Shown here piece after piece: positions 2,464 through 61,860 of a stretch of 64,000 nt of DNA. The stretch's first letter is position 1; each line of letters opens with the position of its first letter. The notes below the pieces were generated by a model. The model saw only the letters and a list, made by a program, of their open reading frames with translations. It did not search any database and had not been told where the DNA came from. The stretch is from positions 186,001 to 250,000 of IMG/VR virus record IMGVR_UViG_3300038463_000730. One strand, 5' to 3'. The translations under genes and the position numbers were made by a program.

Positions 2464-2526
2464 AGTTGCCTCCACTAAACTAGTGGACAGCGTATTCTAT
2501 ATATCGACCTAATCCGAATTGTATAA

Positions 2527-3216
2527 TTAGAGCCAGAGATACTGCAAAGTTCCGTTAACCGGGCTCGGTGGCGCAATACAAAGCGCAACGGCTGGATGAT
2601 GCGGAGTAACTTGACGTGTCGTTAGTAAACCAAGTTCACTAACAAACAAGTTCGCATTCAATGGATAGACTTGGTTCGTCTCGTAAACGTCCGTTTCACC
2701 GATAAAGCGCTGAAACCATACCGCGATACGGCCAGCTCCGATTGTCGAGTCATCTCCAATGATATTTGGGATCTGGTAACGATAGTTAACAACCGCTCGA
2801 ATCGCATTCGGTTGTCCCGAGCCGATCGCATCGAAATTGAGCGGCGTTCCGGCTGGAAATGTCACCAGTCCGTTCCGAGCTGTCAAAACCAAGCTGATAC
2901 TGCTCGTAAAACTTGATTGGATAACGTTCGGGTTCTTGAGCGGCACGAGTACATCGATTGGGGTAACAAGCTGTCCGTTCGGACCCGGAACGCCCGTTGC
3001 CGGAACAATCACGAACTCATTCCATGATGGAGCGGTAAACGCTCGTGTACGGATCTCGTCGATTACGCCGATCGGCGCTCGACCATCACTAACTCCACAA
3101 ACAACCGTGTTTCCCGAGACGTTTAGCTGAGCAATCATGCCCGGTTCGAACTCGCTTGATGGATCTACTATAAAGCTGAATGGTAGAGCGTTTCCTGTTT
3201 GAATAATTCTAAGCAT
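2527..3216 (-). CDS. Beta-rich structural protein, possibly capsid decoration/cement-like
   Basis: Beta-strand/Gly-Pro composition (FEPGMIAQL..PIGVID..LFVSELGLLT); lies downstream of the protease/scaffold gene; function inferred from position. Confidence 0.45.
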   Translation of the reverse strand: MLRIIQTGNALPFSFIVDPSSEFEPGMIAQLNVSGNTVVCGVSDGRAPIGVIDEIRTRAFTAPSWNEFVIVPATGVPGPNGQLVTPIDVLVPLKNPNVIQSSFTSSISLVLTARNGLVTFPAGTPLNFDAIGSGQPNAIRAVVNYRYQIPNIIGDDSTIGAGRIAVWFQRFIGETDVYETNQVYPLNANLFVSELGLLTTRQVTPHHPAVALCIAPPSPVNGTLQYLWL

Positions 3217-3234
3217 ACCGTATATATACCGATA

Positions 3235-3669
3235 TTATCGCTCATCCTCGAAGTCTTTTAGCATTGATTCGACCTTATCAAGATCTTTTTCATCAATAAC
3301 TAGATCGTCCTTCGCTTCTGCACCTTCGAAATTGTTATGATCTTCCGCTTTGTAATCCTTGCGACGAAACGGAGTTCCGGTCTCGTGCAGACCCTTCTCT
3401 TCATTCGCAATTTCACTTTTCAGCTTCGAATCGCAATCCTGGCTAGCCAAGATCTCTAGGAATCTAGTTAGTTTACCAGCTTCTTTCCAGGCCTTGATTC
3501 GATCCAGTTTGTCTGCTGCGGTAGAAACAAGATCAATCGCTCTCGATATCTTTGTTGTTTCGAGCAAGTTTTCTGTTGCGTTCTTGGTAAGCAACTTACT
3601 CATCGAGTTACAGATCTCATCTTCTACGGATGTAGCAGCGAAGGCGCCTGGTTTTTTGAACGTATTCAT
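3235..3669 (-). CDS. Putative internal-head protein (paralog family with 3669-3884 and 3977-4642)
   Basis: EDEICNSM...AIDLVSTAADKLD helical module; LTKNA motif. Confidence 0.6.
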   Translation of the reverse strand: MNTFKKPGAFAATSVEDEICNSMSKLLTKNATENLLETTKISRAIDLVSTAADKLDRIKAWKEAGKLTRFLEILASQDCDSKLKSEIANEEKGLHETGTPFRRKDYKAEDHNNFEGAEAKDDLVIDEKDLDKVESMLKDFEDER

Positions 3670-3884
3670 TACTGCCCCGATCCGAATTTAGAGATTACCA
3701 ATGTAATGTACTCAGCCGCATCACCATATCCGGCCCGCTCGAAGATATCGGCTGCCGAATGAAGCATATCAATCGCTTCCATGGCTTCCTTCTCTATGTC
3801 AAGCTTTTCGTGACCGAATGTAGTATTGAGATTGGACATCATTGAGTTGGCCAACTCATCTTCGAGAGAAATCTTGTTTTTCAT
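3669..3884 (-). CDS. Putative internal-head protein (paralog)
   Basis: EDELANSM...AIDMLHSAADIFERAG; IEKEA motif; stop overlaps next start. Confidence 0.6.
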   Translation of the reverse strand: MKNKISLEDELANSMMSNLNTTFGHEKLDIEKEAMEAIDMLHSAADIFERAGYGDAAEYITLVISKFGSGQ

Positions 3885-3918
3885 ATGGTTCCTAATCTAA
3901 ATATAACCCCTCTAAAGA

Positions 3919-3957
3919 GAATGGAGAGCTTCGGTGATAGAAACCGGCTCTCCATTC
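3919..3957 (-). terminator. Stem-loop, probable terminator or processing hairpin
   Basis: GAATGGAGAGC (3919-3929) pairs with GCTCTCCATTC (3947-3957), with inner CGGT/ACCG; weak U-tract on the minus strand. Confidence 0.65.
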
Positions 3958-3976
3958 AAAGTTGCAGGGATGTGAG

Positions 3977-8117: not shown

Positions 8118-8329
8118 TACTTCTCCGAATTAGGATCGGCCTTCGGGGCAACTCTTGGCTGCACTGATGGCTTGACAAGTTTCGTTTGCTTTACAGCTAG
8201 CTTGGCCATGGCCAAACGACGATGTGTCATCAGGTCAACGTCTTCTTCATCATTACCCTTGCCCCAATCCAAGACCTCTTCCTTGTCTTCGACTACGATC
8301 GGTACAATTGCTCGTTTGATAAAAGGCAT
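8117..8329 (-). CDS. Small hypothetical protein
   Basis: GGAG RBS; stop overlaps the protease start; begins MPFIKRA. Confidence 0.6.
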   Translation of the reverse strand: MPFIKRAIVPIVVEDKEEVLDWGKGNDEEDVDLMTHRRLAMAKLAVKQTKLVKPSVQPRVAPKADPNSEK

Positions 8330-8428
8330 TAACTCTCCAACAATCCTATAAATCTATAACTGATTATTCCACTATTTTGACGTAATAGATGCGAATTTGT
8401 CAAATGTATTCTCGATTATTCCTATATT

Positions 8429-9049: not shown

Positions 9050-9050
9050 G

Positions 9051-10262
9051 TTAGACAAAGCCGCCTCCAATTGGACCACTGGTTCCCCAACCAAATCCGT
9101 TCGTGTTAGTTCCACCATCGGATGTTCCGACTTGCGGAACCTCATTAGGCTCTATACCACCTGGTACCTTTTTTGGTATGATATCAGCTTTCGGGTCAGT
9201 ATCGGTTCCTTGTCCATTTTGGTTTCTAGTACTAGCCGAACTATTTACGAAATCCCAGTGACTACCGTATGACGCATCACCCATGCCGTACGGGTTGACT
9301 TCGTTAGCTTCGTACAGTCTGACGCCGAAAGATGGGTCGTTAAGCTCGTAGCTTGTATCGAACTTGTAGTCCGCCACAGCATCGGGCCACAGCATCTCCA
9401 TCGCCGAATTCGAATCTTGACCAGCTATCGCATGGATCATCTTCTCGTAAAGCGTACGTACTTTCTTTGGTAATCCGGAGCAAAAATCGAACTTGTCTGC
9501 TTCAGCAATCGCATCCTCCGGGCTCATACCTTTCGACACCCGGTACAACGCAACCACGAGCCCGGTACGATCCTTACCATGCAAACAATGTACAAAAGTC
9601 GGACCTGATTCTTCGAATAGCTCTTTGAAATTCATCTTCATCAAGCCACGCAACGACTGTTGCTTCTTAGCCATGATCGGAATTATCACGTGGACCATTC
9701 CGAGCTTCTTCACGAGTGGACCGATCTTCTTAGCCGTGTCCAAATCCAAACTAACAATCTTCTTGATACCTAGTTTCTTCAGGTATATAAGGTCCTCAGG
9801 AGTAGCGGGAGCACCTCCTCGATAAAGCTGGTCGGTAACCTTAGAAAACCTAGGAATCGCTGGGTCTTCCAACACATCCACCGAACTCTCATCCCCCTCA
9901 GGTATGCCTTCGAACTTAAATTTCTTCCCCAACAAAGCGAGTGTTGTGCGAAGCGCTTTCTCTTCACTTTTTCCTTTCAATGCTGGAAACACAGAGTCGA
10001 ACACAGACTTGAACAAGACCCGGAACAACGCAAACAATTCATCATTGCCTGACGCACGCAATTTACGCATGACCGCCGAGTACGATAGGTCACCGACGTC
10101 AGATAGGTTGATAGAGTCGGTCGCGATCTTCCGAATCTCAACTTCTTTTAGACGTTCGACTGCCTTAGAACGACTCGAAAAGGTTCCGAAGTTCTTTCCG
10201 GTGTATGATTGCACCTGGTATCTCCCGTTCGGAAGTTTCCGGATGATGGCAGTCTTGATCAT
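9051..10262 (-). CDS. Protein-tyrosine/dual-specificity phosphatase (Siw14/IphP-like) with N-terminal extra domains
   Basis: FSKVTDQLYRGGAP, LKKLGIKKIVSL and P-loop FVHCLHGKDRTG (HCX5R). Confidence 0.88.
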   Translation of the reverse strand: MIKTAIIRKLPNGRYQVQSYTGKNFGTFSSRSKAVERLKEVEIRKIATDSINLSDVGDLSYSAVMRKLRASGNDELFALFRVLFKSVFDSVFPALKGKSEEKALRTTLALLGKKFKFEGIPEGDESSVDVLEDPAIPRFSKVTDQLYRGGAPATPEDLIYLKKLGIKKIVSLDLDTAKKIGPLVKKLGMVHVIIPIMAKKQQSLRGLMKMNFKELFEESGPTFVHCLHGKDRTGLVVALYRVSKGMSPEDAIAEADKFDFCSGLPKKVRTLYEKMIHAIAGQDSNSAMEMLWPDAVADYKFDTSYELNDPSFGVRLYEANEVNPYGMGDASYGSHWDFVNSSASTRNQNGQGTDTDPKADIIPKKVPGGIEPNEVPQVGTSDGGTNTNGFGWGTSGPIGGGFV

Positions 10263-17784: not shown

Positions 17785-19638
17785 TTATCTCATTCTTGGA
17801 ACTGTGCCAAGCGTAATTGGCAAATTACCGTGTTTTCTCTTGTCAAACGGGTTATTGAAGAGTAGCGGATTTTTTACAGTGAACCCTTGTGTTAGATAGA
17901 ACTTGTAAGCCAGGTACCCGTTCAACATAGCCATGAAACCGTCATTAGGAGTCGCTCCCTTCACATAGTGCGGCGACATATCTCCAGAACGATTAACGCT
18001 TGGTTTAATCTCCATGCTAGTACAGTGCTGTACGAGCCAATTCACCTTCTCATAGTCGCCGTAAGGAAACCGTACATGGCCTTTCTTCATTTGCTCGTAC
18101 ATTTCACCAATAGAAAAGTCGCGCTCGAACTGAATCATCTTTGGAAAGATGTCCTTCTGGAACTTTACCTTGTCCATAATTCTTGGGAGCGCGTTCGATG
18201 CCAAAAACTTGTCTCCATACTCGTTCTGCATTATCTCGCAGAAGTCGTTTGAGTACCCGATATCGCATACTGCCACGTTCACACTGTAAATCCGCATCAA
18301 ATGGTCTATGAACGCCTTCTTACTAGCGAAGTCGTTACGCTTGAACTTCGCTGCAAACTCGATTTGCAGGCGTTTTGGACCGGACAGCGACATGATCACG
18401 ACGCAGCTATAGCTCTGACCAACTCCTTTCAGCTTCGAGTTCTCTGCGAGCTGCTCCATGTCCGATTTGGCCCCGATGTCGATACCCATGAACACAGCTT
18501 GCTCGGCACCCGGTGGAATATGTGCCCGGAAACGACGCCCAACATCTCCGCATTTCTCACGGACATCATCCGGAGTCATGATACCGGACTCACCCGAGAA
18601 GAACTCTCCCAATACCTCGTTCTGGTAGGCTCGTTCTGTATTGATCGGTGAGTTTCCTGGCTTTTCTGATACAATCTTCTCTTTGTTGAATTCCGGAATG
18701 AACAACTGGCTCATGTGGAAACCGATGAACGGACAATCGTCCGGGTTCTTCAACGCTACCCACTTGCCAGTTTCGGCGGCATCACGTTTATCTTGTTCGT
18801 GATTGCAATGTGGGCACTTGACGGTAAAACCGTGAAGCCACGTCTTCTCCCAGTCATCCGTGCCGGGGGTATAGAGCGGGAAGAACCGATTGCAACCAGA
18901 ACAATGTAAATTAAAATATTGCTGTGACGATTGGTTCCACATCTCGAAGAACTCGCTACCGCGCTGCTTCGGTGTACCGAAGAATATCTGAACACCGTCA
19001 CCTAGTTTTCCATAGTTAGCTTTCGCCAACATCTTGGTCGCGTTACCTATGGCGAGACCAGGGATATCTTGTACTTCATCGAAGAAAATAACATCGGCTG
19101 ATCGACCACGAAGTCTGTCAGCCGTTTCACCCGTTGATTCGATCCAGATATGATTGCCGCCAACGAACTGTTTGAAATTCAACGAATCATTTCGTCCGCT
19201 CGTTTGATCCAGTAGGCCTTGCATATAGGACCGAGGCTTCTGCCCCTTCTTCGCCTGATCGAACGACACAGCGTTCGTGATCATCGGGTTGAGCTTGGTT
19301 TTAGAGTAAGCGTAAGCTAGATCCAACTGCGGGAATGCATGGATGATACGCATCGGAGGGTTACTGGAGTTACCAAATAACCCACACCCCATGAAGTACA
19401 TCTCCAAGGCTGATGCCATCGTCGTGGCACCAACCTGGCGCCCTTTTACGATGATAACTGGCTTCGAATCTTTCTCCAAAGCCTTGATCGCAATGTAGCG
19501 ATAGATATCGGAGAACGGCTTGTAACCGCCTCGCAAAGTAAACGGTTTACCGTCGAGTGTAAGATACTTTTCGACGTAATAAATTGGGTCTAAACTTAAA
19601 AGTGAAGACTTAAGTTGTGCAAATAATTCATCAGACAT
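17785..19638 (-). CDS. Terminase large subunit (lambda GpA-like)
   Basis: Walker A KGRQVGAT, LRGRSADVIFFDE Walker B, GTP coupling motif, CxxC..CxxC ribbon, nuclease GIDIG and NDGFMA. Confidence 0.92.
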   Translation of the reverse strand: MSDELFAQLKSSLLSLDPIYYVEKYLTLDGKPFTLRGGYKPFSDIYRYIAIKALEKDSKPVIIVKGRQVGATTMASALEMYFMGCGLFGNSSNPPMRIIHAFPQLDLAYAYSKTKLNPMITNAVSFDQAKKGQKPRSYMQGLLDQTSGRNDSLNFKQFVGGNHIWIESTGETADRLRGRSADVIFFDEVQDIPGLAIGNATKMLAKANYGKLGDGVQIFFGTPKQRGSEFFEMWNQSSQQYFNLHCSGCNRFFPLYTPGTDDWEKTWLHGFTVKCPHCNHEQDKRDAAETGKWVALKNPDDCPFIGFHMSQLFIPEFNKEKIVSEKPGNSPINTERAYQNEVLGEFFSGESGIMTPDDVREKCGDVGRRFRAHIPPGAEQAVFMGIDIGAKSDMEQLAENSKLKGVGQSYSCVVIMSLSGPKRLQIEFAAKFKRNDFASKKAFIDHLMRIYSVNVAVCDIGYSNDFCEIMQNEYGDKFLASNALPRIMDKVKFQKDIFPKMIQFERDFSIGEMYEQMKKGHVRFPYGDYEKVNWLVQHCTSMEIKPSVNRSGDMSPHYVKGATPNDGFMAMLNGYLAYKFYLTQGFTVKNPLLFNNPFDKRKHGNLPITLGTVPRMR

Positions 19639-19676
19639 ACTCTAGAATATAACGAGAATGGCTGAAATTAGCTGAA

Positions 19677-25201: not shown

Positions 25202-25898
25202 AGTCAGTTTCCCATATACTTATCAAGTTATATCCAGCCTTCTTTATCAATTCCTCGCGCTGAAGCGTCTGTTGATACAATTCGCCGAATGTTTTCTTAC
25301 TCCTTTGATTGAAATCGTTTTTATTAAATCGAATTGGGTTGCCATGCCAATAATCACCGTAAAACTCATACACGGTATTTGTTTCTGGCTTGTACCCATC
25401 CACTTTGTAATTATGATAGAGGACTTTTACTAGCGTCTGCCGATGTGCAACATCTACACCGAGTCCGTCTAACCATTCCGTCTCTTGCTTAGAAATACGC
25501 TTTAAACAACGAGGGCAACCATTACCTGCAAGGTGGTTGCCTGGAGTCTGACTAAACGCAACATTACAGCGTTTACATAAAATCGAGATCTTGGTGTCTT
25601 TGTTTTTGTAGACTACACCTGCGTAATCGTATAGCTGTCCATGCACCTGGATAGCATCTACCACAAATTCGCTAATGCGTTTGCGTTTTGATTCGGCTTT
25701 GGCAACGTTACCACATGTCGGACAGCCCTGACCTCGCATATGATTATTTGCTAACTGTGTGAACATGTGTTCACACACATTACATCGAACGGTTATCTTC
25801 GAACTTAGGTTTACGTAACCACATTCCGAATAGTCATATGTGCAACAGTGAACCAACCTGCATCTATCTAAAAACTCTGATTTGGTCAGTTTCCTCAT
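25182..25898 (-). mobile_element. Putative homing endonuclease: DUF723-like zinc repeats plus a Vsr/PD-(D/E)XK-like nuclease
   Basis: Two YDY...I.C..C...F.Q...NH..G.GCP.C repeats; VDGY..VYEFYGDYWHGNP..GYNLISIWE. Confidence 0.8.
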
Positions 25899-25912
25899 AC
25901 ATTAGATATAAC

Positions 25913-30571: not shown

Positions 30572-30589
30572 TAACCAATTATATATCGA

Positions 30590-34474: not shown

Positions 34475-34489
34475 ACATAGCAATATATC

Positions 34490-34523
34490 AAAGAAAAAGC
34501 CCCGGAATTGCTTCCGGGGCTTT
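34490..34523 (-). terminator. Rho-independent terminator after the SSB gene
   Basis: GCCCCGGAA-GCAA-TTCCGGGGC followed by TTTTTCTTT on the minus strand. Confidence 0.88.
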
Positions 34524-36083: not shown

Positions 36084-36121
36084 GATGTTCCTACTATTTA
36101 TATATCAGGACGATGTATAAT

Positions 36122-37980: not shown

Positions 37981-38729
37981 TATCCGGCCCTATGAATCTT
38001 ACCGACTCCACCGGTCTGACGCATTTCCTGATTGATTTGCTGACGGTTCATTGTTCGAATCTTTGCCAACATATCAGCGCCGCTAGGAGCCTGTCCGCCA
38101 CCATTACCCATTCCTGCAAACGCATTCACAATGGCATTGTGTGCGGCATCATCATCACCACCTCCGCCTCCACCGCTGCCACCGCCGCCACCGGCTAGAG
38201 CATTGGCATAGACTTGAACCTGCGCATCCATCGGTTCACCGCCGCCATCACCCCCATCCGCATCAGGAGCGTTCCATGCCGCAATCAATGCAGCATTGCC
38301 TCCGCCGCCTCCACCGCTCGAAGCGGCCATCGCTGCTTCAATCTCGGACTTCGACTTTGGTTTCACGTTCGCTCGTGCGAGGAACTTATTGATCGTTGCA
38401 ACCGGACTTTGAGGCTCGGGCAATCGTTGGCTGACCGGAATTCCGTTCTTCCCAACTTGCACGGCCACATTTCCGTTGCCATGAACCATGGCCTGGTGAA
38501 ACGTTGCAGCTTCACCCGTACCGATCTTGGCGAGTTGGTAATGGGACAGGAGCCAACCAGCAATCCCTTCAGGATTGTTTGGCATATCATTCATTGCTTC
38601 GCGTAGTTCGCCAAGCAAATGAACCTCTGTGTCGGACATCAACGTTCCGCCACAAGATGGACAAGTATTTGTGTTAAGCGCATGTACCCATTGTGGTGGG
38701 ACGTCTGCTGAGCAATGACCGCATTTCAT
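37980..38729 (-). CDS. Zinc-ribbon protein with Gly-rich disordered C-half
   Basis: MKCGHC...CPSCG; poly-Gly runs. Confidence 0.6.
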   Translation of the reverse strand: MKCGHCSADVPPQWVHALNTNTCPSCGGTLMSDTEVHLLGELREAMNDMPNNPEGIAGWLLSHYQLAKIGTGEAATFHQAMVHGNGNVAVQVGKNGIPVSQRLPEPQSPVATINKFLARANVKPKSKSEIEAAMAASSGGGGGGNAALIAAWNAPDADGGDGGGEPMDAQVQVYANALAGGGGGSGGGGGGDDDAAHNAIVNAFAGMGNGGGQAPSGADMLAKIRTMNRQQINQEMRQTGGVGKIHRAG

Positions 38730-38741
38730 GCCTTAACTATA

Positions 38742-41700
38742 TCAATTGTCTTGCGGATCTTCATCGAATTCTATTAACCCGGCGTCAAATAGTTCGCTTT
38801 CAATATCGTTCGTTATCTCTTCCTGGGTAGCTGTTTTATCCAGTTCTTTCTCTTCTTTCGGGCCTTTGGGCTGGCGAAGATTGACCTTCTTTTTCTCCTT
38901 GAAATCTGCTGGAAGAGCCGGTGGGGGTGCGTAGGAAAAGATGTTTTCTAGGACCGCACCGGTATCATCTTCATAGATATTGATTGTCCCGTTGAAATGG
39001 ATACAGATCCCCTCCTCAAGTTTCTGTTTCCCTCCGCTGAACAACTTAATTCGCTCGTTTACGAGATCGAGCCCCTCGGGGAACATCGTCAATGACATCT
39101 GGTCGCCATAGACGTCCTCGATGGTCAGTTTCGCCATATCACGACCGAGATACTTTGATCCTTCCTTCTTCACCTTAAAAACGAAGATGCTTTTGATCTC
39201 CGCCTTCATGGAAGGAATCCGCTCCTTGTCGTTCATACTCTTCAGTGTCTTGACTCGGATCGATCCCTTGTCATCGAAGAATGGAACGAACGCATCCTTC
39301 TTTCCACAAGAGAATCCTTCGCCTGCCCAAAGCTTCTCCAGAGCGTACCGTTCGCTCAAGCTCCACTCGGGCTCATCCGGCCACGGATAATTCATTTCCG
39401 AAACGGCCGGGTTATTCTTCTTTAGCCACGAATCAAGCTTCTTTCGATAGTCTTCGCAGTAGAGATAGATCTGACGTCGTTTCAGACCGAACGAATCGAG
39501 ACAGCCGGTCGCTGCCAAGACCTTAATGGATTTGGAGTTCAGCTTCTTTTTCTCGCATCGAACCATGAAGTCGAAGAAGTTACGGAACGGGCGTTTGTCA
39601 ACAATCTCCTGGATCGCATCCTTACCAACGAATGCCATCGCGTTGAGACCAGTAACGATCGTCTTCGCATCTTTGATCGTGTAGCTGATATCAGAGTGGT
39701 TGATATCAGGCGGCATGATCACGATTCGCTGACGTCGAATCTCGGTCTTGATCTTCTCGATGTTGTTCTTGGCAGGTTTGGATTTCGAACGAATCTCAGA
39801 CTTCAAGTTCGCCAGCAAGAATTCGAGCGGATAATGCGCCTTCAAGTAGGCCGTGTAATAACTTGTCATCGAATACAGAATCGAGTGGGACAGATTGAAT
39901 CCGTACCCCTGAAACTTATCGACAACCTCATCCCAGATCTGGGTCGAGACCTTCGGGTCGATGTTCTTGTTCTTCTTGGCGTCATCGATGAAGTCTTGAC
40001 GCCACTTTGCTGCCTTCTTCGGGTTCTTGCCCTTCTCCTTGGTCAATTTACGAAGACGATCGGCCTCGTGCAGGGTCCACCCGGCCACGTCCTGAGCAAG
40101 ATACATCAAGCACTCTTCGTAGAGTCCGAATCCAAACGTTCCACCAAAGGCGCGTTGGAGCGAAGGATCCAATAGTTTGAAAGGCAGCCTTCCATCTTTC
40201 GTCTTAACATAATCTTCGCGTATGTCTCGTGCAGAAGGTCGAGCAAGCGAGTTGATAGCGCTAATATCTTCAATCGACTGTGGTTTTATCTTCTTGCACA
40301 GATCAATCGTTCCCGAGCTAGTACCGAGCTGAAAGACGCAGAATGTATCGCCTCGTGAAAGTAGGTCATAAGTCGCTTGATCATCTAACGGCACATCTAT
40401 CTGTGTAGGCGGGAGCGACTTGCCAGCTTTCGCAGCCAGATCAAAGGTCTCTTTGATGATGTCCAAGGTTTCCAACCCAAGGAAGTCCATCTTAACGAGA
40501 CCGTTTTCTTCGGCTCGGTCCTTATCATACTCAAGCGCAATTGTACCCTCTTTATCTCGACGTAACGGTACCAAACCAGCCAAGGGACGTTGAGAAATGA
40601 CGATCCCGGCCGCATGCGTGGCCCACGCCCGGTAATTGCCACAAATTGCTGAATACTTTTTAATCTTAGGGTACTTCTGCACGTAAGCAGCAAAGAGCCC
40701 AGACTTCTCAATAGCTTTGTCAAAGGTCTTTACATCTTTCGGGCTAGGAATCGAATTAGCAATGTCCTCACCGAGTTTGACCGATGCTTGCCTTGACCCA
40801 GCAAGCTCACAAGCGCGAGTAATGTCTTTCGCATAGACCTTCGGAGTGATGGTGTTGAGATTACTAACGTGCGCCACTTTGTCATCGCCATATTTGTTTC
40901 TCACGTAATCCAGAACTCGGTTACGACCATACGGAGCGAAGTCTGAGTCAATATCCGGGAAACTTGACTTCTCTTTGTTATGGAAACGTGCGAAGATTAG
41001 TTTGTACTGGATCGGATCGGCACGGTGGATATCCAGTAGATATCCAATGAGCGAACCGCCAACCGAGCCACGTCCCGGACCGGTCAAGATATTGTTCTTC
41101 CGAGCCCATTCAATGAAATCGGCAACAATCAGCATGTAACTGCTGAATCCGTGGTATTCGATAACATCAATCTCTTCTTTGAGACGAGCTTCGTATTCCG
41201 CACGACGCGAATCATTCGGCATCCGCTTGTAGGCGTCCTTCTCGCAAAGATAACGCATGTACAGCTTATCTTGCTCAAGAGAGCGCACAGAGTCATTCTG
41301 AGGCCTCGCGACCCATGCCTGAAACTCTTGGAAGTCCGCTTGGTCCTGAACCGGGAAAATCGGCAGTTCTTTTCCTGATGGGTTGGAATACTTCGGATCA
41401 ATCCAGACCGGTTCCTCACACAGGTTGGCGAAGTGTACCGTGTTGTCGATCCAGCCCTCAACCTCGCCTTCGTATTTGCGATTGAAGAATGCCAGGATGT
41501 CATCTGCTGAGTGTAGATACAGATCCGATATTTCGTACTTTAGTCGCGCATTCGAGTATTGCGGTTGCCCGGCCCCAATTGCAAGCATCGCATCATGCGT
41601 ATCAGCATCCTCCTTGTGGAGGTAGTGCGCATTTGATGTCGGTACAATACGTACGCCATGCTTCTTAGCAAGTCGTATAGTATGAGCATTGGTGAAGTCC

Positions 41701-42874: not shown

Positions 42875-43151
42875 ACAACTGAGTGAGAACGGCTTCGAAG
42901 CCGGTCGTCATGTCTTCACACTTAGGTGTTTTACACTTCAGATCAAACGTTGCGCTACCGAATTTGCCAGAGACGATTATGTTATTGTTTTCGGCGTAAA
43001 ACATTCCTACTTTGTAGTACGGTCTCGAAACAGAAAAACCCGCGCCCTCGAATTGTGTTATCGATTCTTTCTTGAGTGAGAAAGACAAACGATAAACGGT
43101 AGAGAAACTACCACAACAAGCCGGGACGCGGGTTTTCACAAAAGCATTCAC
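42855..43151 (-). CDS. Hypothetical Cys-containing protein
   Basis: GTG start directly after the upstream stop. Confidence 0.5.
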   Translation of the reverse strand: MNAFVKTRVPACCGSFSTVYRLSFSLKKESITQFEGAGFSVSRPYYKVGMFYAENNNIIVSGKFGSATFDLKCKTPKCEDMTTGFEAVLTQLYEATKV

Positions 43152-43292
43152 TCAGTATCTATATCCACACGTATAGCATTCGCACGTATAGCATTCACCA
43201 CCCATTCCAGGCATCTTTGGATCTAAAAATAAGCCCCAACGATGACCTCGTAACCAACATAATAGTTTGGTTAACGGTGGCAAATTCCACAT
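43152..43292 (-). CDS. 46-aa C-x3-GH-x-W...CxxC microprotein (DUF1660-like); not in the ORF track
   Basis: MWNLPPLTKLLCWLRGHRWGLFLDPKMPGMGGECYTCECYTCGYRY. Confidence 0.65.
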   Translation of the reverse strand: MWNLPPLTKLLCWLRGHRWGLFLDPKMPGMGGECYTCECYTCGYRY

Positions 43293-43822: not shown

Positions 43823-45146
43823 GTGTATGTCCTTCGTGTCCTGTATGACCGTGGTCTTTGTGTTCGTGACTATGTTCGTGATTTATGTGGTCAACTAGTT
43901 TGCAAGTTGTCACCAACCAGTTGAGAACGCGCTCGTCGCGTATTCTTCCAAGCAATACCGGCAAGCTCCCACTCTTCTGGAGATCCTGGAACGCCTTCTC
44001 GACATCCCCACTCTTGCCGTTCCGGGCTTGCATTTGAGCCAAGTGAAACCGGACCAATTGAAAAGCCTCTTCATCCGAAAGCTGTGCCTCTGGCTCGACT
44101 TCACGGATCTTTTCCAGAACCAACGAAAGTTTGATGCTTTTCTTCGCTTCATTCAGGAACGATTCTTTTTCCTCGTCCGTGAGCTTGTCCCATTCTTTTT
44201 TCGCCATCTTTGATTTGATTTGAGCTTCAGATGACAACAACCAATCCGGAATGGGAATGTCGTGTCCCTCAACCAACCGATGGGACACCTGAACACTGAC
44301 CAGCGAATTTCGGTGCTCGTCAACGCGCGTCGTCGCTACTTGCGCGACGTGCGTACGTAGGTCGTCCAAGTCCTTCATGTTCAGGCGTTTGGCCAACTCG
44401 TCATCCAAGGCGGCTGGAGTCGTTCGCGAGCCCATACAGACCTCGGCCTTGAAGTGGATCGTTTTCCCTTTGAATTCCTCCGAAACATTCGGAGGTGTGA
44501 CGTAATCAAATTCGCGTACGTCACCCATCTTCATTCCAAGAAGATTGTCGTCGAATCCCGGTAGTGGAGATTTTCCGACGTGAACAACCTCTTTCTTTGC
44601 GGTCAGATCCTTGCGAGCAACTCCATCAATCGTTCCTTCGTAATCCAGGAGAATCGAGTCCCCGACCTGAACGAAATCATCATCTGTAAAAGGAACCGAA
44701 TCACCATTCCGCTCGCGCAAATCCTGCAAGATTTTCTCGCTGAATTGGCTAATTGAAATCGGCTCGGCCGGGCGGGGAATTTCGAAATCGCGATACTTAT
44801 TCAATACGACGGTTGGTTTGACTCGCATTGTGAATTCACAAGTGAATTTGGAATCCGTCAGATTCAACATCGAAAACTCCGGCATCCCGAGAGCTTTCAT
44901 GTTGCGATCATTTAGAACACCAATAAACGCTTCCTCAGCCAATACCTCGCGAAGTCGATTTTCGATCTGCTTCTTGTATCGAATCTTAATAGCGTCAAGC
45001 GACGCTTTCCCAGGACGAAAGCCAGGGACGTTAACGCCTTTAAATTCAGCCAGTACCTCAGTTCGCTTAGAGACAATCTTCTCAAGATCAGCCTCGGCAT
45101 GAACCGAAACTTTGCAGTACTCCACTTCATTGACAGCGAATTCCAT
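43815..45146 (-). CDS. tig: Trigger factor with His-rich C-terminal tail
   Basis: VPGFRPGKA ribosome-binding signature; FKBP domain (GD..LDYEG.IDG..LPGFDDNLLGMK.G); LDDELAK; start ATG 45146 behind GAGG. Confidence 0.92.
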   Translation of the reverse strand: MEFAVNEVEYCKVSVHAEADLEKIVSKRTEVLAEFKGVNVPGFRPGKASLDAIKIRYKKQIENRLREVLAEEAFIGVLNDRNMKALGMPEFSMLNLTDSKFTCEFTMRVKPTVVLNKYRDFEIPRPAEPISISQFSEKILQDLRERNGDSVPFTDDDFVQVGDSILLDYEGTIDGVARKDLTAKKEVVHVGKSPLPGFDDNLLGMKMGDVREFDYVTPPNVSEEFKGKTIHFKAEVCMGSRTTPAALDDELAKRLNMKDLDDLRTHVAQVATTRVDEHRNSLVSVQVSHRLVEGHDIPIPDWLLSSEAQIKSKMAKKEWDKLTDEEKESFLNEAKKSIKLSLVLEKIREVEPEAQLSDEEAFQLVRFHLAQMQARNGKSGDVEKAFQDLQKSGSLPVLLGRIRDERVLNWLVTTCKLVDHINHEHSHEHKDHGHTGHEGHTHE

Positions 45147-45174
45147 TCTTAACCTCTTCGTTCCATATATCGAG

Positions 45175-54290: not shown

Positions 54291-54770
54291 TTAGTACTTG
54301 ATCCGTGTTGGGTACGGAGCAGTCGTAGAAACCTTAACTTGAGGTTTTAGCGAAACCTCGATGTATCGTGTTCCACGCTGAACATCATACTTGCTCGAAA
54401 CAAGTGTTTCGAGCGCCGGTAAAAACGCCGGAACGGATGAATCAAGATACAACGTATCTCCACCCGCATCATATGCCTTACAATAAGTATGAACAGGCTT
54501 CGGTGTCAAAGCGAACAAGCTGAGTTGCAAGTCCTTAATCTCATTCCAGATCTGGGTTGAGAGAGGCTTCTCGGGAGCCTGTGGCATTGGTAGCGGCGCC
54601 TGAGCTGTCGCAACTGCGTGCGTGTGCGCGTGCGCTGACCCGGACATCTGCGACTCGATGAAATGCTTGTACTCTTTCTCATTCATCTTAAGTGGCGGAG
54701 CATTGCCCTCTAGAGTTGCCGGTGGTGTGATTTCTGATTCTTTACGTTTCGTCATTGTGGTTCCTTCCAT
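54291..54770 (-). CDS. Hypothetical protein
   Basis: Promoter-like motif upstream. Confidence 0.6.
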   Translation of the reverse strand: MEGTTMTKRKESEITPPATLEGNAPPLKMNEKEYKHFIESQMSGSAHAHTHAVATAQAPLPMPQAPEKPLSTQIWNEIKDLQLSLFALTPKPVHTYCKAYDAGGDTLYLDSSVPAFLPALETLVSSKYDVQRGTRYIEVSLKPQVKVSTTAPYPTRIKY

Positions 54771-55092
54771 TTTTCAATATATCATCGCCGTAGACTTCGC
54801 GCATGGCTGCTCGAAACGCCGATGTCAACATATGGCCTTCTAACTTCTTTACCATGTCTTTCCCTCGGAAAAGTAGGATTGTGGGGACTCTCGTAATATC
54901 GTTGACTTTACAAATACCCCTAAACGATTCGACATCGATAGCCAGCGCGGTGATTCCGTTTTCGGTAGAAACCTGCTCCACCATATTGCGGCTGTTAACA
55001 ACAATCCCCTTAGGGAGCCACGTGGCATAAAAATACAAAACATGGTCAGATGGCAACGATTTCAATTCAGTTTCGTTCAATATCGAATACAT
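54742..55092 (-). CDS. Thioredoxin-fold protein lacking CxxC
   Basis: VLYFYATW, IDVE, ITRVPTILLFRG; WLPKG in place of WCxxC. Confidence 0.7.
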   Translation of the reverse strand: MYSILNETELKSLPSDHVLYFYATWLPKGIVVNSRNMVEQVSTENGITALAIDVESFRGICKVNDITRVPTILLFRGKDMVKKLEGHMLTSAFRAAMREVYGDDILKNGRNHNDET

Positions 55093-55437: not shown

Positions 55438-55950
55438 CTATTTTCCACAACACTTCTTGAATTTCTTATCAGAACCGCAAACACATTTCTCGTTTGGCCC
55501 AACCTTCAACTTCTTCGGTATCGCTTTATCGAAGAAGAGCGTTTGAGTCACATGATCTAGTTCATGTTGGCAAACCACTGCCAACATTCCGGTTGCAACA
55601 AACCTTTTTGGATGAAGTAGATTACCAGCCACGACAATCTCTTGAAACCGCGTTGTCGTTTCAATGCGTCCAGGAAAAGAAAGACATCCCTCATTATGAA
55701 AGGGTCTGGGATCATAGCCATGCTCTAATCGCGCGTTCACCAAATCGAATTTAAACTCGTGGTCCAACCGAACTATCGCCATCTTTTTAGCGATGCCAAT
55801 TTGTGGCGCAGCCAAACCGACTCCAGAGCGACCAAGCCTTTCGCAGCGAGCCAACTCCAACTCCAGTGCTTCTCGGAGCGGAGCAATTTCGTCACTCGTG
55901 ACGTCTTCACATTTTACCCGCAACGCTGCTTCGTCGTTCGTAATAAGCAT
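55438..55950 (-). CDS. def: Peptide deformylase fused to a C-terminal SEC-C motif
   Basis: GVGLAAPQIG, EGCLS, QHELDH; GPNEKCVCGSDKKFKKCCG; start ATG 55950. Confidence 0.93.
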   Translation of the reverse strand: MLITNDEAALRVKCEDVTSDEIAPLREALELELARCERLGRSGVGLAAPQIGIAKKMAIVRLDHEFKFDLVNARLEHGYDPRPFHNEGCLSFPGRIETTTRFQEIVVAGNLLHPKRFVATGMLAVVCQHELDHVTQTLFFDKAIPKKLKVGPNEKCVCGSDKKFKKCCGK

Positions 55951-55956
55951 GACCAG

Positions 55957-55965
55957 TATATATCG
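55957..55965 (-). promoter_or_regulatory. Class A promoter-like motif (Y)GnTATA(T/G)N, an extended -10-like box; representative copy
   Basis: Copies at 2498, 19646, 25905, 30578, 34482, 36099, 38736, 45164, 54776, 55957, 58212 and 60523, each just upstream of a gene start. Confidence 0.7.
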
Positions 55966-56197: not shown

Positions 56198-56202
56198 ATG
56201 AA

Positions 56203-57690: not shown

Positions 57691-58205
57691 GGCTGATTCC
57701 TAACAAGCGCTTCAGCAATCTGATACATTGTATCGTCGCTATTTCGCCCTCTAAATGTGTTGATTTGATTCAACACAAATCTAATATTGTCTTTTGTATA
57801 TCCTCCACTATGAACGATACGATCCACGCTTATCGAATTCCATGGTGTGTAACTTTTTTCAACCTTCTTAATTCTAACCATAGGTAGATTGGTTAGCTCA
57901 CACTTCCACTCTATCTCATTCAATCTGGATAGAACCCAGTCACGATCTAAATCAAAAGGCAAGCCCTGTTGTTTACATAGACTTTTTTTATGTCGAACAA
58001 TCTCCGCCGCAATACCAACATCCGTCATGCGATACTCGTCCACATCATCCTTCTCACACTTTCGACATGTATTGTTTATGTATTTTCCTTTACCGCGGCC
58101 TGACTTTTTCTCTCTTACACGAAACAGTCCGACGTCTAACATTTCTCTGCATTCAAAGCATATTTTCTTCGAATGATCTTTTGAATATGAATCATAATTA
58201 GCCAT
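57687..58205 (-). mobile_element. Putative homing/HNH-like endonuclease
   Basis: CxxC..CxxC N-terminus; C.LT.LP..S.DRI....GYTKDN.RFV...N. Confidence 0.7.
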
Positions 58206-58237
58206 ACCGGCAATATATCAACGGTGGCCAGGGCGGA

Positions 58238-59355: not shown

Positions 59356-59374
59356 TCAATCTCCCGTCGCTACG

Positions 59375-60061
59375 TTATTCAATCGATACGCCAACTCGGA
59401 TTCTCATCCTCATCAATACAACAAAATCATCCGGGTCTAACGACATACCCTTAAAATCAGGATGGCGATCATAGATGATATCCGATACTATCTCGTTCAT
59501 TAGGCCCAAATCACCACGAGCAACGATCTTACCTTTGATCATGAGAAGATAGCCACCAGGAGCGACAAAATCGTGATTCGGCTCTGATACGGAAGTATCT
59601 TGAGCTTCCGTAAAAGATTGAACATCTTCACCGTCATAGTTCTCTGTTTCAAATTCTTTTCTGGAATCTTTGTAATTCTGAACAGGTACATCATATTGAT
59701 CTGCATTTATCATCACATCATCATCTTCCGAAACAGGAACGCCGTTCATTGTCCAGAGATGTTCCTCGCCGCCTGTACTGTACGGAACCTGCGCTTGCGG
59801 TGGCGCAAGCGGCTGCTGCAAATTGTTCGGCCAACCACGATTATCACGAATACGCTGAGTTGCTCCGACTCGCGCCTGTTCCTGAGGATTCTCACGTCCA
59901 GGCGGAATGTGAACTACTCGGTGCTGAGTGACAGACTGGGGTTCCACGACCCGTCCCGACCGATCCATAAGAATCGGCTGTTTGTTCCATCGTACGTATT
60001 CTGGTACGTATGGTTTTTGTTTTGGTAACGGTCTTCGTGGAACCCTATTCTGTTGATCCAT
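59375..60061 (-). CDS. Hypothetical protein
   Basis: AAGGA RBS. Confidence 0.55.
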   Translation of the reverse strand: MDQQNRVPRRPLPKQKPYVPEYVRWNKQPILMDRSGRVVEPQSVTQHRVVHIPPGRENPQEQARVGATQRIRDNRGWPNNLQQPLAPPQAQVPYSTGGEEHLWTMNGVPVSEDDDVMINADQYDVPVQNYKDSRKEFETENYDGEDVQSFTEAQDTSVSEPNHDFVAPGGYLLMIKGKIVARGDLGLMNEIVSDIIYDRHPDFKGMSLDPDDFVVLMRMRIRVGVSIE

Positions 60062-60062
60062 A

Positions 60063-60476
60063 TTATCCTTCTAAGTCATCCATATGCGCCATTGGCTCGA
60101 TGTCATACTTTCGATCTTTCTTCGACTCTTTGACATCACCGTTGGCATAACGAACCTTCTTCATCTCCAGTTCGAAAAGTTTACGACGCATTTCATTCCG
60201 CTTCCTACGCAACTTATCAGATCGTTTTTCAAACGACTGTTTCTCCTTGTAGAGAGCCAGGATCCTTTCCTTTTGAACCTGAGCACGGAAAGCCTTAAAT
60301 GCCTTGTCAAAATTGTTGTACACTTTGACTTCAAGCGGGATCGCCTGAACTGCATCAGTAGGATATGTCGCTCCAGTAGGAACGACGCTGCGGGACGAAT
60401 TCGCAATAAACTTTTCACCTCCCTTCGAATAGTTGGTGTTCTTTCTTGATACGTATCCGTTATTCTTGTTGCTCAT
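60063..60476 (-). CDS. rpsU: Ribosomal protein bS21 homolog with N- and C-terminal extensions
   Basis: V.V.NNFDKAFKAF...V.KE.IL..YK....FEK.SDK.RRKR. Confidence 0.85.
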   Translation of the reverse strand: MSNKNNGYVSRKNTNYSKGGEKFIANSSRSVVPTGATYPTDAVQAIPLEVKVYNNFDKAFKAFRAQVQKERILALYKEKQSFEKRSDKLRRKRNEMRRKLFELEMKKVRYANGDVKESKKDRKYDIEPMAHMDDLEG

Positions 60477-60528
60477 CTACTACTTAAATTACCTCGTTCA
60501 ATGCCTTCCGGCATACCACACATCTATA

Positions 60529-61860
60529 TCAGTCTTTCTGTGAATTACGGCCCAAACCAATGTTTTTTCGTCCACGACCTATGTTCTTGTCCTTCATAAC
60601 AATGTCCAACGCACGATTGATGTCACTAATCGTTGGTGACTTACGATCATGCGCCAAAGCCTCATAGATCGAGGAAATGTAGAACTCCTTAAGGTAAGCG
60701 TAAGAAAATTTGTACTTGAAAGCTAATGCCGAAATCTCTTTCGCCTTATCCGGCTTCAAGGCCGCCCCGAACCACTTCATTAGGTATTTCATACACATCA
60801 TACGGTCAGGCAACGGAACTTCGAATTTGCGGTCAAACCTGGAAGGACGTTTCCGAATGTTGTCCTCAAACACATCGAGGTTGTTTGCTGTCGCAACAAC
60901 GAGTAACCCGTTCTTCGAACTCACCCCGTCCATCAGCCCAAGAAACTGGGAGATGTTAACCGTCTGAAACATCGAATCCAGCTCTTCGAAATAAAGCAGC
61001 GCTGGTGATTGTGACTCGGCGTAGTTGAACGCCTCTCTCATTGCACTATCACCAGCACCACCGGCAATCGTCACGGGCTTGAAGTTGTAATTTGAAATGA
61101 TCGTTCGGATCAATGACGTCTTCCCACACCCCGGCTCACCCCACAGCAGAACACCACGTTTCCATGGAATACCGGCCTGCTCGTAGAATTCACGCGAGAT
61201 AAGGAATGTTTCGATACATCCTCGGATGTCTTTCTTCAGATTGACTGGTAAGAACAAGCTATCCCAAGTAGCTTCTTTGGTATACGGAAGATCTTCTCCC
61301 TCGACTACTTTGATCTGAAGGTTCTGCCGATCGCGTTGTTTGACCCAGTCCTCAAATTGATTCCTGAACGCAAGGTATTTATCATGTAACGCCACTGGGA
61401 CAATGTTAAAGAACGATACTTCATCCTCGTTCTGGTTCCCCTTGTGAAACAACCCAGCGTGTATAAAATTAAGTTGACCAGGTGCTCTGATAAGGAAAAC
61501 GCCTTGTACAAAGAACTTCTCATAGTCTTGCTCGGTACGCCAAGAGATAATTGAATCGTTATAGATGCATTCTATTTTTACATTGTTCTCTTCGCAGAAA
61601 CGAACGAACTGTCCATCCATGATGATGCGGTTATGGACAAACTTCACAACTTGTGCCGCCTTGCCTCCACTTGTAAGGCAAGATGCAAAATTACGCTCAG
61701 TCCAATTCATCAACTCGATGAAACTAGAACTAGGCCGTTTCTCCTGAACCTTCTGACACTGACCAGAAGTCAGAACCCGAATCAATCCTTCGGTCAGATG
61801 TTCTTGTTTATCAAGCGTCGCCGCTGTGGCGAAGTTGACTTTCTTTAGTGCTTGAGTCAT
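60529..61860 (-). CDS. AAA+ ATPase (classical clade) with a unique N-terminal domain
   Basis: GIPWKRGVLLWGEPGCGKTS, LYFEELD, ATAN, RPSRFD. Confidence 0.9.
   Translation of the reverse strand: MTQALKKVNFATAATLDKQEHLTEGLIRVLTSGQCQKVQEKRPSSSFIELMNWTERNFASCLTSGGKAAQVVKFVHNRIIMDGQFVRFCEENNVKIECIYNDSIISWRTEQDYEKFFVQGVFLIRAPGQLNFIHAGLFHKGNQNEDEVSFFNIVPVALHDKYLAFRNQFEDWVKQRDRQNLQIKVVEGEDLPYTKEATWDSLFLPVNLKKDIRGCIETFLISREFYEQAGIPWKRGVLLWGEPGCGKTSLIRTIISNYNFKPVTIAGGAGDSAMREAFNYAESQSPALLYFEELDSMFQTVNISQFLGLMDGVSSKNGLLVVATANNLDVFEDNIRKRPSRFDRKFEVPLPDRMMCMKYLMKWFGAALKPDKAKEISALAFKYKFSYAYLKEFYISSIYEALAHDRKSPTISDINRALDIVMKDKNIGRGRKNIGLGRNSQKD

What the first reader, a model, noticed from the sequence alone, without database searches (positions are those of the whole stretch)
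2498..60531. Recurring extended -10-like boxes 5-7 nt before start codons: many leaderless mRNAs
Seen (mRNA sense): CGA-TATATA-6nt-ATG (def), TGA-TATATT-6-ATG (58205), TGA-TATAGT-6-ATG (38729), TGA-TATATT-7-ATG (ruvC, right after a terminator), TATAAT-6-ATG (30571), CGT-TATATT-7-ATG (terminase), AGT-TATATC-6-ATG (25898), CGG-TATATA-6-ATG (3216), TGA-TATATT-5-ATG (54770). Most have no properly spaced SD. The same box lies further upstream of SD-led genes (tig, 36083, 2463, rpsU). Inference: transcription starts at or next to the AUG, notable in a phage with its own bS21.
Basis: partly seen in the sequence, partly recalled or inferred. Interest (0 to 1): 0.62.

Follow-up and report, generated by a model that had tools for sequence, protein, structure and literature searches.

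The report
Promoter boxes abutting start codons: leaderless phage genes
In this 435-kb peat phage and its relatives, a short promoter-like box (GATATAT) sits exactly 6-8 bases before the ATG of about 30-45 genes that lack a ribosome-binding site, so these genes are most likely transcribed as leaderless mRNAs; this way of expressing genes is known elsewhere but has not been described in huge phages.

Summary
All nine cited sites are at the stated coordinates. Genome-wide (434,688 bp) the box G[AT]TATA[TG] lies 5-8 nt before a start-like ATG 32 times against 3.0 expected (mode 7 nt; Poisson p 4e-22).

Boxed genes have almost no Shine-Dalgarno (8% against 40% of other genes). They start almost only with ATG and show pyrimidine at -1 and A at +1. 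The 47 boxed proteins fall into 44 unrelated clusters, so gene duplication does not explain the pattern.

The same spacing peak occurs in three related huge phages and in the pooled terminase neighbourhoods of about 65 more relatives. It is kept at several orthologues, including ruvC.

The box also lies further upstream of SD-led genes, often so that the SD begins 7 nt after it, and upstream of three tRNA genes. This fits a promoter, not a translation signal.

No -35 element was found, and T at -7 is not conserved. No phage RNA polymerase was found, but a 207-aa sigma factor is encoded.

Best reading: a clade-specific, -10-only promoter starting transcription at or within 2 nt of the AUG. Nobody has mapped the 5' ends, and no RNA runs hold this phage. 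There is no evidence for a link to the phage bS21. The kind is known (Deinococcus-Thermus, phage phiYS40); this is a new member.

The parts
3214..3230 (-). GGTATATA, 6 nt, ATG of the 229-aa ORF 2527-3216 (no family hit). Leaderless type.
   Evidence: Orthologues in G003/G004/G005 start at the same residue but carry the box plus a 15-nt SD leader.
9143..9158 (-). GGTATAGA, 5 nt, ATG of the 238-aa ORF 8429-9145. A weaker box and a leaderless-type candidate.
19636..19653 (-). GTTATATT, 7 nt, ATG of the terminase large subunit (17785-19638).
   Evidence: Relatives often have a box near the terminase start, but at 7 or 11 nt.
25896..25912 (-). GTTATATC, 6 nt, ATG of an HNH/homing-endonuclease-like ORF (25182-25898).
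30569..30587 (-). GATATATA, 8 nt (or TATAAT, 6 nt), ATG of a 153-aa protein resembling sigma region 4 (30110-30571).
34472..34523 (-). Strong terminator hairpin (34496-34523), then GATATATT (34482-34489), 7 nt, ATG 34474 of RuvC (190 aa).
   Evidence: G003 and G004 have the same order of terminator, box, 7 nt, ATG.
38727..38743 (-). GATATAGT, 6 nt, ATG of the 249-aa ORF 37980-38729.
   Evidence: Orthologues start at the same residue but without the box.
43149..43165 (-). GGATATAGA, 6 nt, GTG of the 98-aa ORF 42855-43151. A candidate GTG-start leaderless gene.
   Evidence: GTG at this spacing is only slightly above background, so this one is tentative.
54768..54783 (-). GATATATT, 5 nt, ATG of the 159-aa ORF 54291-54770.
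55948..55964 (-). CGATATATA, 6 nt, ATG 55950 of peptide deformylase (170-aa reading).
   Evidence: In the 187-aa reading from ATG 56001 the Pfam domain starts at residue 20 (profile position 5), so 55950 fits the N-terminus of the domain. ATG 56001 has a weaker box without the G.
58203..58219 (-). GATATATT, 6 nt, ATG of an endonuclease VII/HNH-like ORF (57687-58205).
45144..45171 (-). GATATATG, 17 nt containing an AGAGG SD, ATG 45146 of trigger factor. Leadered type: the SD begins 7 nt after the box.
36081..36106 (-). GATATATA, 15 nt, ATG of the 103-aa ORF 35772-36083. AGGAAC begins 7 nt after the box.
3882..3907 (-). GTTATATT, 15 nt, ATG of the 71-aa ORF 3669-3884. AGGAAC begins 7 nt after the box.
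2461..2505 (-). GATATATA, 34 nt containing a GGAGG SD, ATG 2463 of a GIY-YIG endonuclease.
60474..60530 (-). GATATAGA, 46 nt, ATG 60476 of the bS21 ORF (137 aa, S21 domain at residues 49-100).
8327..8360 (-). GTTATAGA, 23 nt containing a GGAG SD, ATG of the 70-aa ORF 8117-8329.

Best explanation
GATATAT(a/t) is the main promoter element of this phage clade. It is a -10-type box with a G two bases upstream and no -35 partner. It is read by the host RNA polymerase, carrying either the phage's own 207-aa sigma factor or the host primary sigma.

Transcription starts about 7-8 nt after the TATANN hexamer. At about 30-45 genes the ATG sits at exactly that point, so the mRNA begins with, or within 2 nt of, AUG. 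Such an mRNA has no Shine-Dalgarno and must be translated by the leaderless route, in which the ribosome binds a 5'-terminal AUG.

At other genes the same box lies further upstream and gives short SD-led leaders, often starting right at the SD. It also appears to drive a few tRNA genes.

Shown: the motif, its spacing, the lack of SD, the ATG preference, and conservation across relatives. Inferred: that it is a promoter, the exact start point, which sigma reads it, and the translation route.
For: - Spacing peak: 32 against 3.0 expected, mode 7 nt.
- De novo EM motif G-a-T-A-T-A-T-w with a positional peak.
- TATATA is the top over-represented hexamer both upstream of starts and in intergenic DNA.
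- SD-like words occur in 8% of boxed genes against 40% of others, with a random-window background of 10-16%.
- ATG occurs 23 times at spacing 7, against GTG 3 and TTG 3.
- In the strict set, position -1 is a pyrimidine in 23 of 27 sites and G is enriched at -2/-3. Other genes are A-rich there. Pyrimidine at -1 with purine at +1 is the usual bacterial start dinucleotide (general knowledge).
- The distance to the upstream stop codon varies from 2 nt to several kb, so this is not reinitiation.
- 44 of 47 boxed proteins are unrelated to each other.
- The boxed ATG coincides with the N-terminus conserved in orthologues for several genes and with the start of the deformylase domain.
- The same peak occurs in G004 (16 against 3.5), G003 (13 against 2.7) and G005 (6 against 1.3), and in pooled loci of about 65 relatives (21 against about 5).
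- Box and spacing are kept at orthologues of ruvC, a glycosyltransferase, Thg1 and others, while the spacer sequence differs.
- Three of 24 tRNA genes have a box 10-24 nt upstream, against about 0.5 expected.
- In leadered genes with 15-17 nt spacing, the SD starts 7 nt after the box.
- RuvC and one other gene have the box directly after a strong terminator.
- No RNA polymerase beta or beta-prime domain and no T7-type polymerase were found.
- A sigma factor with region 2 and a weak region 4 is encoded, and it is conserved in relatives.
Against: - No transcript 5' end is known. No RNA run holds the phage.
- The box is not a canonical sigma-70 -10. T at -7 is not conserved (A18, T12, G11, C6 of 47) and T at -15 is weak. 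The holoenzyme and the exact start distance therefore cannot be read off E. coli rules.
- The conserved G-G-Y before the ATG could mean the start is at a G, giving a 2-3 nt leader.
- Terminators are not enriched upstream of boxed genes: 5 of 47 against 40 of 569, p 0.38.
- In some relatives the terminase box is 11 nt or 1-3 nt from the called ATG.
- About 10-15 of the 47 loosely defined sites are expected by chance (TATA 63 against 16.5).
- The T7-polymerase search had no positive control.
Confidence: 0.7

Rival explanations
1. The box is a promoter, but transcription starts several bases before the AUG. The start could be at the conserved G's, or directly after TATA if a polymerase or sigma with a different geometry is used. 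The mRNAs would then carry 2-10 nt leaders without an SD rather than being strictly leaderless.
For: G is enriched at -3/-2 of the ATG. The box departs from the sigma-70 -10 at position -7. A phage sigma is present. Spacings of 5 to 8 nt all occur.
Against: - The G-G-Y triplet follows the ATG, not the box, in both the 6- and 7-nt classes. This fits pyrimidine at -1 and A at +1.
- The tight coupling of the ATG to the box is hard to explain if the 5' end is elsewhere.
- No phage polymerase was found.
Confidence: 0.15
2. The motif acts in RNA, not DNA. It would be a translational operator or enhancer, or a processing site, at a fixed distance from the AUG. The comparison is with T4 RegA-type operators or AU-rich S1-binding enhancers, both cited from general knowledge.
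For: The distance to the start codon is fixed. Boxed genes lack an SD, so something else must recruit ribosomes. Relatives were binned with Bacteroidota MAGs, a phylum that makes little use of the SD (the statement about the phylum is general knowledge).
Against: - The same box occurs at many other distances upstream of SD-led genes.
- It occurs upstream of three tRNA genes, which are not translated.
- It occurs directly after strong terminators.
- It is the only strong intergenic motif, so no other promoter candidate is left.
- The 7-nt spacer is G-rich, not A/U-rich.
Confidence: 0.08
3. The box is a DNA operator for a dimeric regulator, since some sites look palindromic, or a target or terminus of the homing-endonuclease cassettes. 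It would overlap gene starts only incidentally.
For: The core TATATA is its own reverse complement, and a few sites have flanking CCGA...TCGG arms. At least 9 of the 47 boxed genes resemble homing endonucleases.
Against: - Folding energy around the box is no greater than at other genes (p 0.82).
- The flanks carry little information beyond the G and the G-G-Y.
- Most boxed genes are not endonucleases, and they keep the box at orthologous positions in other genomes.
Confidence: 0.04
4. The pattern is chance or a by-product of base composition or of the choice of start codons.
For: Start codons were called by simple rules and TATA was used as a seed. The loose set contains an estimated 10-15 chance sites.
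Against: - Start-independent tests show the same peak.
- Three control words show no comparable ATG peak at that spacing, and most control words show none.
- The Poisson p is 4e-22.
- The peak is replicated in three other genomes.
Confidence: 0.01

Closest known systems
-10 motif adjacent to ORFs giving leaderless mRNAs in Deinococcus-Thermus (PMC12340547); also Actinobacteria (PMC4633059)
   Same: A -10-like box lies a few bases before the start codon. There is no SD and no obligatory -35. The spacing to the ORF is specific. A second class of genes in the same genome uses GGAG-type SDs.
   Different: - There the motif is TANNNT, read by the host's primary sigma, and it covers about a third of the genes.
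- Here the core is G-a-TATAT with a non-conserved last position, and it covers 5-8% of genes.
- Here it is a property of a phage clade, and a phage sigma may be involved.
- In D. radiodurans function was shown by experiment; here it was not.
Thermus phage phiYS40 (and P23-45) middle/late genes
   Same: A large phage makes most of its middle and late mRNAs without a leader and relies on the host apparatus to translate them (PMC3594737, citing Sevostyanova 2007).
   Different: - The host phylum of phiYS40 is itself rich in leaderless genes.
- phiYS40 is reported to shift host IF2/IF3 levels.
- This phage encodes IF1 and bS21, no IF3 C-terminal domain was found, and its host is unknown.
- I could not read the primary phiYS40 paper.
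T4 late promoters (TATAAATA, gp55)
   Same: The promoter is AT-rich, consists of a -10 region only with no -35, and is read by the host core polymerase with a small phage sigma (general knowledge). Free-standing homing endonuclease genes carry promoters of their own.
   Different: The sequence differs (GATATAT against TATAAATA). T4 late mRNAs are SD-led. No gp55 homologue was tested here.
Jumbo phages with mapped transcription starts: phiKZ and AR9
   Same: They are very large phage genomes with phage-specific, AT-rich promoter motifs.
   Different: - phiKZ showed no leaderless transcript and typical 5'UTRs of 31-40 nt (PMC8244752).
- AR9 has UTRs of 26-491 nt (PMC5312081).
- Both encode their own multisubunit polymerases, which were not found here.
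E. coli extended -10 promoters (TGnTATAAT)
   Same: G lies two bases before the hexamer, the first four positions are TATA, and no -35 is needed.
   Different: T at -15 is present in only about 28% of sites. T at -7 is not conserved. The fifth position is T rather than A.

Membership tests
Leaderless genes with an ORF-adjacent -10 element | A -10-like motif at a fixed short distance (about 5-8 nt) before the start codon, more often than chance | tested here: met
   32 sites against 3.0 expected, mode 7 nt. An EM search gives a positional peak.
Leaderless genes with an ORF-adjacent -10 element | No Shine-Dalgarno at these genes | tested here: met
   3 of 36 boxed genes against 229 of 569 others have an SD-like word at -17 to -4.
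Leaderless genes with an ORF-adjacent -10 element | The start codon is AUG (or GUG) at the 5' terminus of the primary transcript | not testable with these tools
   ATG dominates at the peak, 23 against 3 GTG and 3 TTG. No RNA run holds the phage, so the 5' ends are unknown.
Leaderless genes with an ORF-adjacent -10 element | The box has promoter activity | tested here: inconclusive
   The support is indirect: boxes before tRNA genes, boxes after strong terminators at ruvC and one other gene, the box being the sole strong intergenic motif, and conservation in relatives. Terminators are not enriched overall. There is no experiment.
Sigma-70 extended -10 promoter (TGnTATAAT) | TG at -15/-14 | tested here: inconclusive
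   G is present in 72% of the 47 sites and 95% of the EM motif. T at -15 is present in only 13 of 47.
Sigma-70 extended -10 promoter (TGnTATAAT) | Conserved A at -11 and T at -7 in the hexamer | tested here: not met
   A at -11 holds, but the last hexamer position is A18, T12, G11, C6 and carries 0.15 bits in the EM motif.
Full sigma-70 promoter (-35 plus -10) | A TTGACA-like element 16-18 nt upstream | tested here: not met
   Positions -40 to -16 carry no information. The consensus scan finds 25 and 23 sites against 25.1 and 26.4 in shuffles.
Promoters of phage-encoded RNA polymerases (T7-like, phiKZ/AR9-like) | The phage encodes the polymerase | tested here: not met
   There is no Rpb2_6, Rpb1_2 or T7-type RNA_pol match. 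The T7 search had no positive control. Nine of the large ORFs were scanned: five match ribonucleotide reductase, tail proteins or a protease-like domain, and four have no match.
T4-type late promoter | TATAAATA box read by a gp55-like sigma | tested here: not met
   The consensus is GATATAT(a/t). The phage sigma matches generic sigma-70 regions 2 and 4. gp55 itself was not searched for.

The most novel reading that the evidence does not exclude
The clade runs its own expression channel that does not depend on the SD. A phage sigma factor would direct host polymerase to -35-less GATATAT promoters that emit leaderless mRNAs for terminase, RuvC, deformylase, homing endonucleases and others. The clade-conserved, extended bS21 and the phage IF1 would remodel host ribosomes to favour these 5'-AUG mRNAs, or to switch between them and the phage's SD-led genes. 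The host may be a Bacteroidota bacterium whose own ribosomes mask the anti-SD.
Probability: 0.1. Interest if true: 0.8.

Novelty: new member of a known kind. Interest (0 to 1): 0.42.

Why it matters
- It gives a concrete, testable promoter motif and a transcript model for an uncultivated clade of huge phages (200-450 kb), for which no transcription signals are known.
- It corrects start codons. Deformylase starts at 55950, RuvC at 34474 and trigger factor at 45146.
- It shows that huge phages, unlike phiKZ and AR9, may use leaderless expression for a defined set of genes.
- If confirmed, the box could be used to find promoters and to time gene classes in metagenomic phage genomes.
- The co-occurrence with phage-encoded sigma, IF1 and bS21 makes the question of how giant phages steer host translation testable.

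Tried and rejected
- RNA evidence. The one run search found only peat DNA runs and no RNA holder. Read laying was therefore not used, because contigs of DNA runs cannot show a 5' end.
- Iterative PWM refinement drifted into coding words such as CGATATC and was dropped. The second EM run, seeded with AGGA, degenerated and was ignored.
- Terminator enrichment upstream of boxed genes is not significant: 5 of 47 against 40 of 569. Only ruvC, one gene at genome position 291063, and a GTG gene at 307298 have clear terminators.
- Hairpin or dyad hypothesis: there is no difference in folding energy.
- Termination-reinitiation: there is no fixed distance to the upstream stop codon.
- Paralogy: only 2 small paralogue groups among the 47 proteins.
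- Sigma-70 consensus scan: not above shuffles.
- A 14-bp hairpin followed by CGGTATATT at 48198-48229 lies inside an SD-led ORF and is probably incidental.
- Host.
  - A terminase search of bacterial genomes found nothing with the single protein.
  - With an alignment it found two relatives on contigs binned as Bacteroidia and Chitinophagales MAGs. This is co-binning only.
  - The protein atlas search with trigger factor gave no usable taxon.
- Phage polymerase: no hit with three Pfam families or among nine of the large ORFs.
- The primary phiYS40 paper is not held.

Full report
**What the window is.** The window is bases 186,001-250,000 of a single 434,688-bp virus record. The near-identical DNA is held by peat metagenome runs, and no RNA run holds it.
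- All long ORFs of the window lie on the minus strand.
- The window encodes:
  - terminase large subunit, RuvC, peptide deformylase and a small protein resembling sigma region 4;
  - topoisomerase, DNA polymerase III alpha, a RecA-like protein, trigger factor, an SbcC-like ATPase and a GIY-YIG endonuclease;
  - bS21.
- The genome also carries 24 tRNA genes, an IF1 homologue and a 207-aa sigma-70-family protein.
- No RNA polymerase beta or beta-prime domain and no T7-type polymerase were found. Of nine large ORFs scanned, five match ribonucleotide reductase, baseplate, tail fibre, tail sheath or a protease-like domain, and four have no match.

**Check of the observation.** All nine cited box-ATG pairs and the four upstream boxes are in the sequence exactly as written.

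The pattern holds genome-wide.
- TATATA, GATATA and ATATAT are the most over-represented hexamers in the 40 nt before gene starts and in intergenic DNA.
- A start-independent count shows that TATA-type hexamers are followed after 5-7 nt by an ATG opening an ORF of at least 60 codons 11-13 times per position, against about 3-4 elsewhere. Control hexamers are flat.
- For G[AT]TATA[TG], the counts at spacings 6, 7 and 8 are 7, 19 and 5. That is 32 in 5-8 nt against 3.0 expected from spacings 12-51 (p 4e-22).
- ATG is the commonest triplet 7 nt after the box, 23 of 267, while GTG and TTG stay at background.
- An EM search on the 30 nt before 605 starts gives G(0.95) a(0.62) T(0.97) A(0.95) T(0.88) A(0.97) T(0.83) w. 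It finds about 58 sites, of which 25 have the G at -15 or -14.
- With a loose definition, 47 genes are boxed. Allowing for chance, about 30-45 are real, which is 5-8% of roughly 600 genes.

**What the boxed genes share.**
- SD-like words at -17 to -4 occur in 8% of them, against 40% of other genes and 10-16% of random windows. The rest of the genome clearly uses AAGGAG-type SDs peaking at -12 to -8.
- The three bases before the boxed ATG are G-G-Y. In the strict set a pyrimidine occupies -1 in 23 of 27 sites, where other genes are A-rich (p 0.02 to 7e-4). This triplet follows the ATG in both the 6- and the 7-nt spacing classes. That is what a start-site preference for pyrimidine at -1 and purine at +1 would give (general knowledge).
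- No -35-like signal exists between -40 and -16. A sigma-70 consensus scan is not above shuffles.

**Alternatives tested and excluded.**
- The end of the upstream gene lies anywhere from 2 nt to kilobases away, so the stop codon of the preceding gene is not part of the signal.
- Folding energy around the box, and of the first 40 nt of the presumed mRNA, is the same as for other genes.
- The 47 proteins fall into 44 unrelated clusters.

**Evidence that the box is a promoter rather than a translation signal.**
- The same box lies 10-70 nt upstream of about 20-30 SD-led genes. In the 15-17 nt class (tig, 36083, 3884 and one at genome position 300663) the AGGA/AGAGG of the SD begins exactly 7 nt after the hexamer. 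That is where the ATG sits in the leaderless class.
- Three of 24 tRNA genes (Gln, Tyr, Pro-tgg) have a consensus box 10-24 nt before the mature 5' end, against about 0.5 expected.
- At ruvC and at the gene at genome position 291063 the box directly follows a strong terminator. At ruvC only about 20 nt separate the terminator from the ATG. Overall, however, terminators are not enriched.

**Related phages.** The terminase finds 69 related viral contigs, several of them 200-450 kb long. I fetched three of these whole: G003 (252 kb), G004 (268 kb) and G005 (203 kb).
- All three show the same peak: 13 against 2.7, 16 against 3.5 and 6 against 1.3.
- G003 and G004 show the G two bases before TATA, and G004 also shows the G-G-T before the ATG.
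- Pooled over the terminase neighbourhoods of the other relatives, the peak at 7 nt is again present, 21 against about 5. These include AT-rich genomes and a contig binned as Bacteroidia.
- At the orthologue level, box and spacing are kept at ruvC (three genomes, each after a terminator), a glycosyltransferase, Thg1, a 103-aa gene, an endonuclease and the UvsW-like helicase, while the spacers differ.
- Orthologues of the 229-aa gene at 3216 instead have the box plus a 15-nt SD leader. This shows that the two layouts interconvert.
- For the terminase the box is near the start in many relatives, but at 7, 11 or 1-3 nt from the called ATG.
- Sigma, bS21 and IF1 are conserved in both complete relatives.

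**Which genes.** Boxed genes include:
- terminase, RuvC, deformylase and the sigma-r4-like protein;
- a UvsW-like helicase, glycosyltransferases, an RmlD-like enzyme and Thg1;
- UDP-glucose dehydrogenase;
- at least nine HNH, endonuclease VII or homing-endonuclease-like genes.

Structural operons mostly have the box with a leader. The sigma gene itself has no box; it follows a terminator-like hairpin and is preceded by an AGGA SD-like word.

**Interpretation.**
- The most economical reading is a clade-specific, -10-only promoter whose start point coincides with the AUG at a subset of genes.
- It works like the ORF-adjacent -10 motif of Deinococcus-Thermus (PMC12340547) and like the leaderless middle and late genes of Thermus phage phiYS40 (PMC3594737).
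- It is not a canonical sigma-70 extended -10, because T at -7 and T at -15 are not conserved. So the phage sigma is a candidate reader, but that is only inference.
- The two jumbo phages with mapped starts differ. phiKZ has no leaderless transcript (PMC8244752), and AR9 has UTRs of 26-491 nt (PMC5312081).
- I found no paper in the library that describes leaderless genes in huge phages.

**Limits.**
- No 5' end is known. The start could be at the G's, 2-3 nt before the AUG.
- The host is unknown.
- The bS21 link is speculation.
- Gene starts were called by simple rules. However, the start-independent tests and the N-termini of orthologues agree with them.

Noticed in passing
window 57687-58205, 25182-25898, 1594-2475; genome 16187-16744, 64064-64678, 288478-289029, 303125-303577, 342505-342960, 348243-348698, 427108-427638: Many free-standing HNH, endonuclease VII and GIY-YIG (homing-endonuclease-like) genes are scattered through the genome. 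At least nine carry the box-ATG cassette, which is a very compact self-contained expression unit for a mobile gene. Two sit directly after tRNA genes.
   Followed up: partly
genome 373599-374804 (outside the window): ARAGORN calls three tRNA-like genes with abnormal (2-base) anticodon loops and one tRNA with anticodon CTA, an amber suppressor, next to each other. The long ORFs read open under table 11, so recoding is not evident.
   Followed up: no
window 60063-60476 (-): The bS21 ORF is 137 aa. The S21 domain covers only residues 49-100. A 48-aa N-terminal extension and an acidic C-terminal tail flank it. Relatives have ORFs of 110-140 aa. The box lies 46 nt upstream and there is no clear SD before ATG 60476.
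   Followed up: partly
window 55438-55950 (-): The peptide deformylase ends in a SEC-C zinc-binding motif (Pfam, last 18 residues), an unusual fusion. A second, weaker box precedes an upstream in-frame ATG at 56001.
   Followed up: partly
genome 56758-56937 (+) and 96157-96780 (-): The phage encodes an IF1 homologue and a 207-aa sigma-70-family factor. Together with bS21, they are conserved in both complete relatives (447 kb and 361 kb). No IF3 C-terminal domain was found.
   Followed up: partly
L133, L134: The only bacterial-genome records with a related terminase are 172-kb and 383-kb contigs binned as Bacteroidia and Chitinophagales MAGs. Yet this phage and its relatives use strong AAGGAG SDs at about 40% of genes. 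That would be odd for a Bacteroidota host, whose ribosomes mask the anti-SD (general knowledge).
   Followed up: partly
L030, L031, L044, L053, L057: In several relatives the terminase match spans 2.2-2.7 kb, against 1.85 kb here, for the same roughly 610 residues. This suggests an intron, an intein or another insertion in the terminase gene.
   Followed up: no
window 2527-3216 (-) and its orthologues in G003, G004, G005: The same gene is of the leaderless type here (box, 6 nt, ATG). In three relatives it is leadered (box, 15 nt with an AAGGA SD, ATG), with identical N-termini. This is a natural switch between the two layouts.
   Followed up: yes
window 48198-48229 (-): A 14-bp perfect hairpin followed by CGGTATATT lies inside the SD-led 105-aa ORF 48082-48399. 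Its function is unknown and it may be incidental.
   Followed up: partly
whole record: IMG/VR classes this 435-kb record, and the 361-kb relative G002, as 'provirus', with CheckV completeness of 100% and 97%. I saw no integrase or host flank, but I did not look for them.
   Followed up: no
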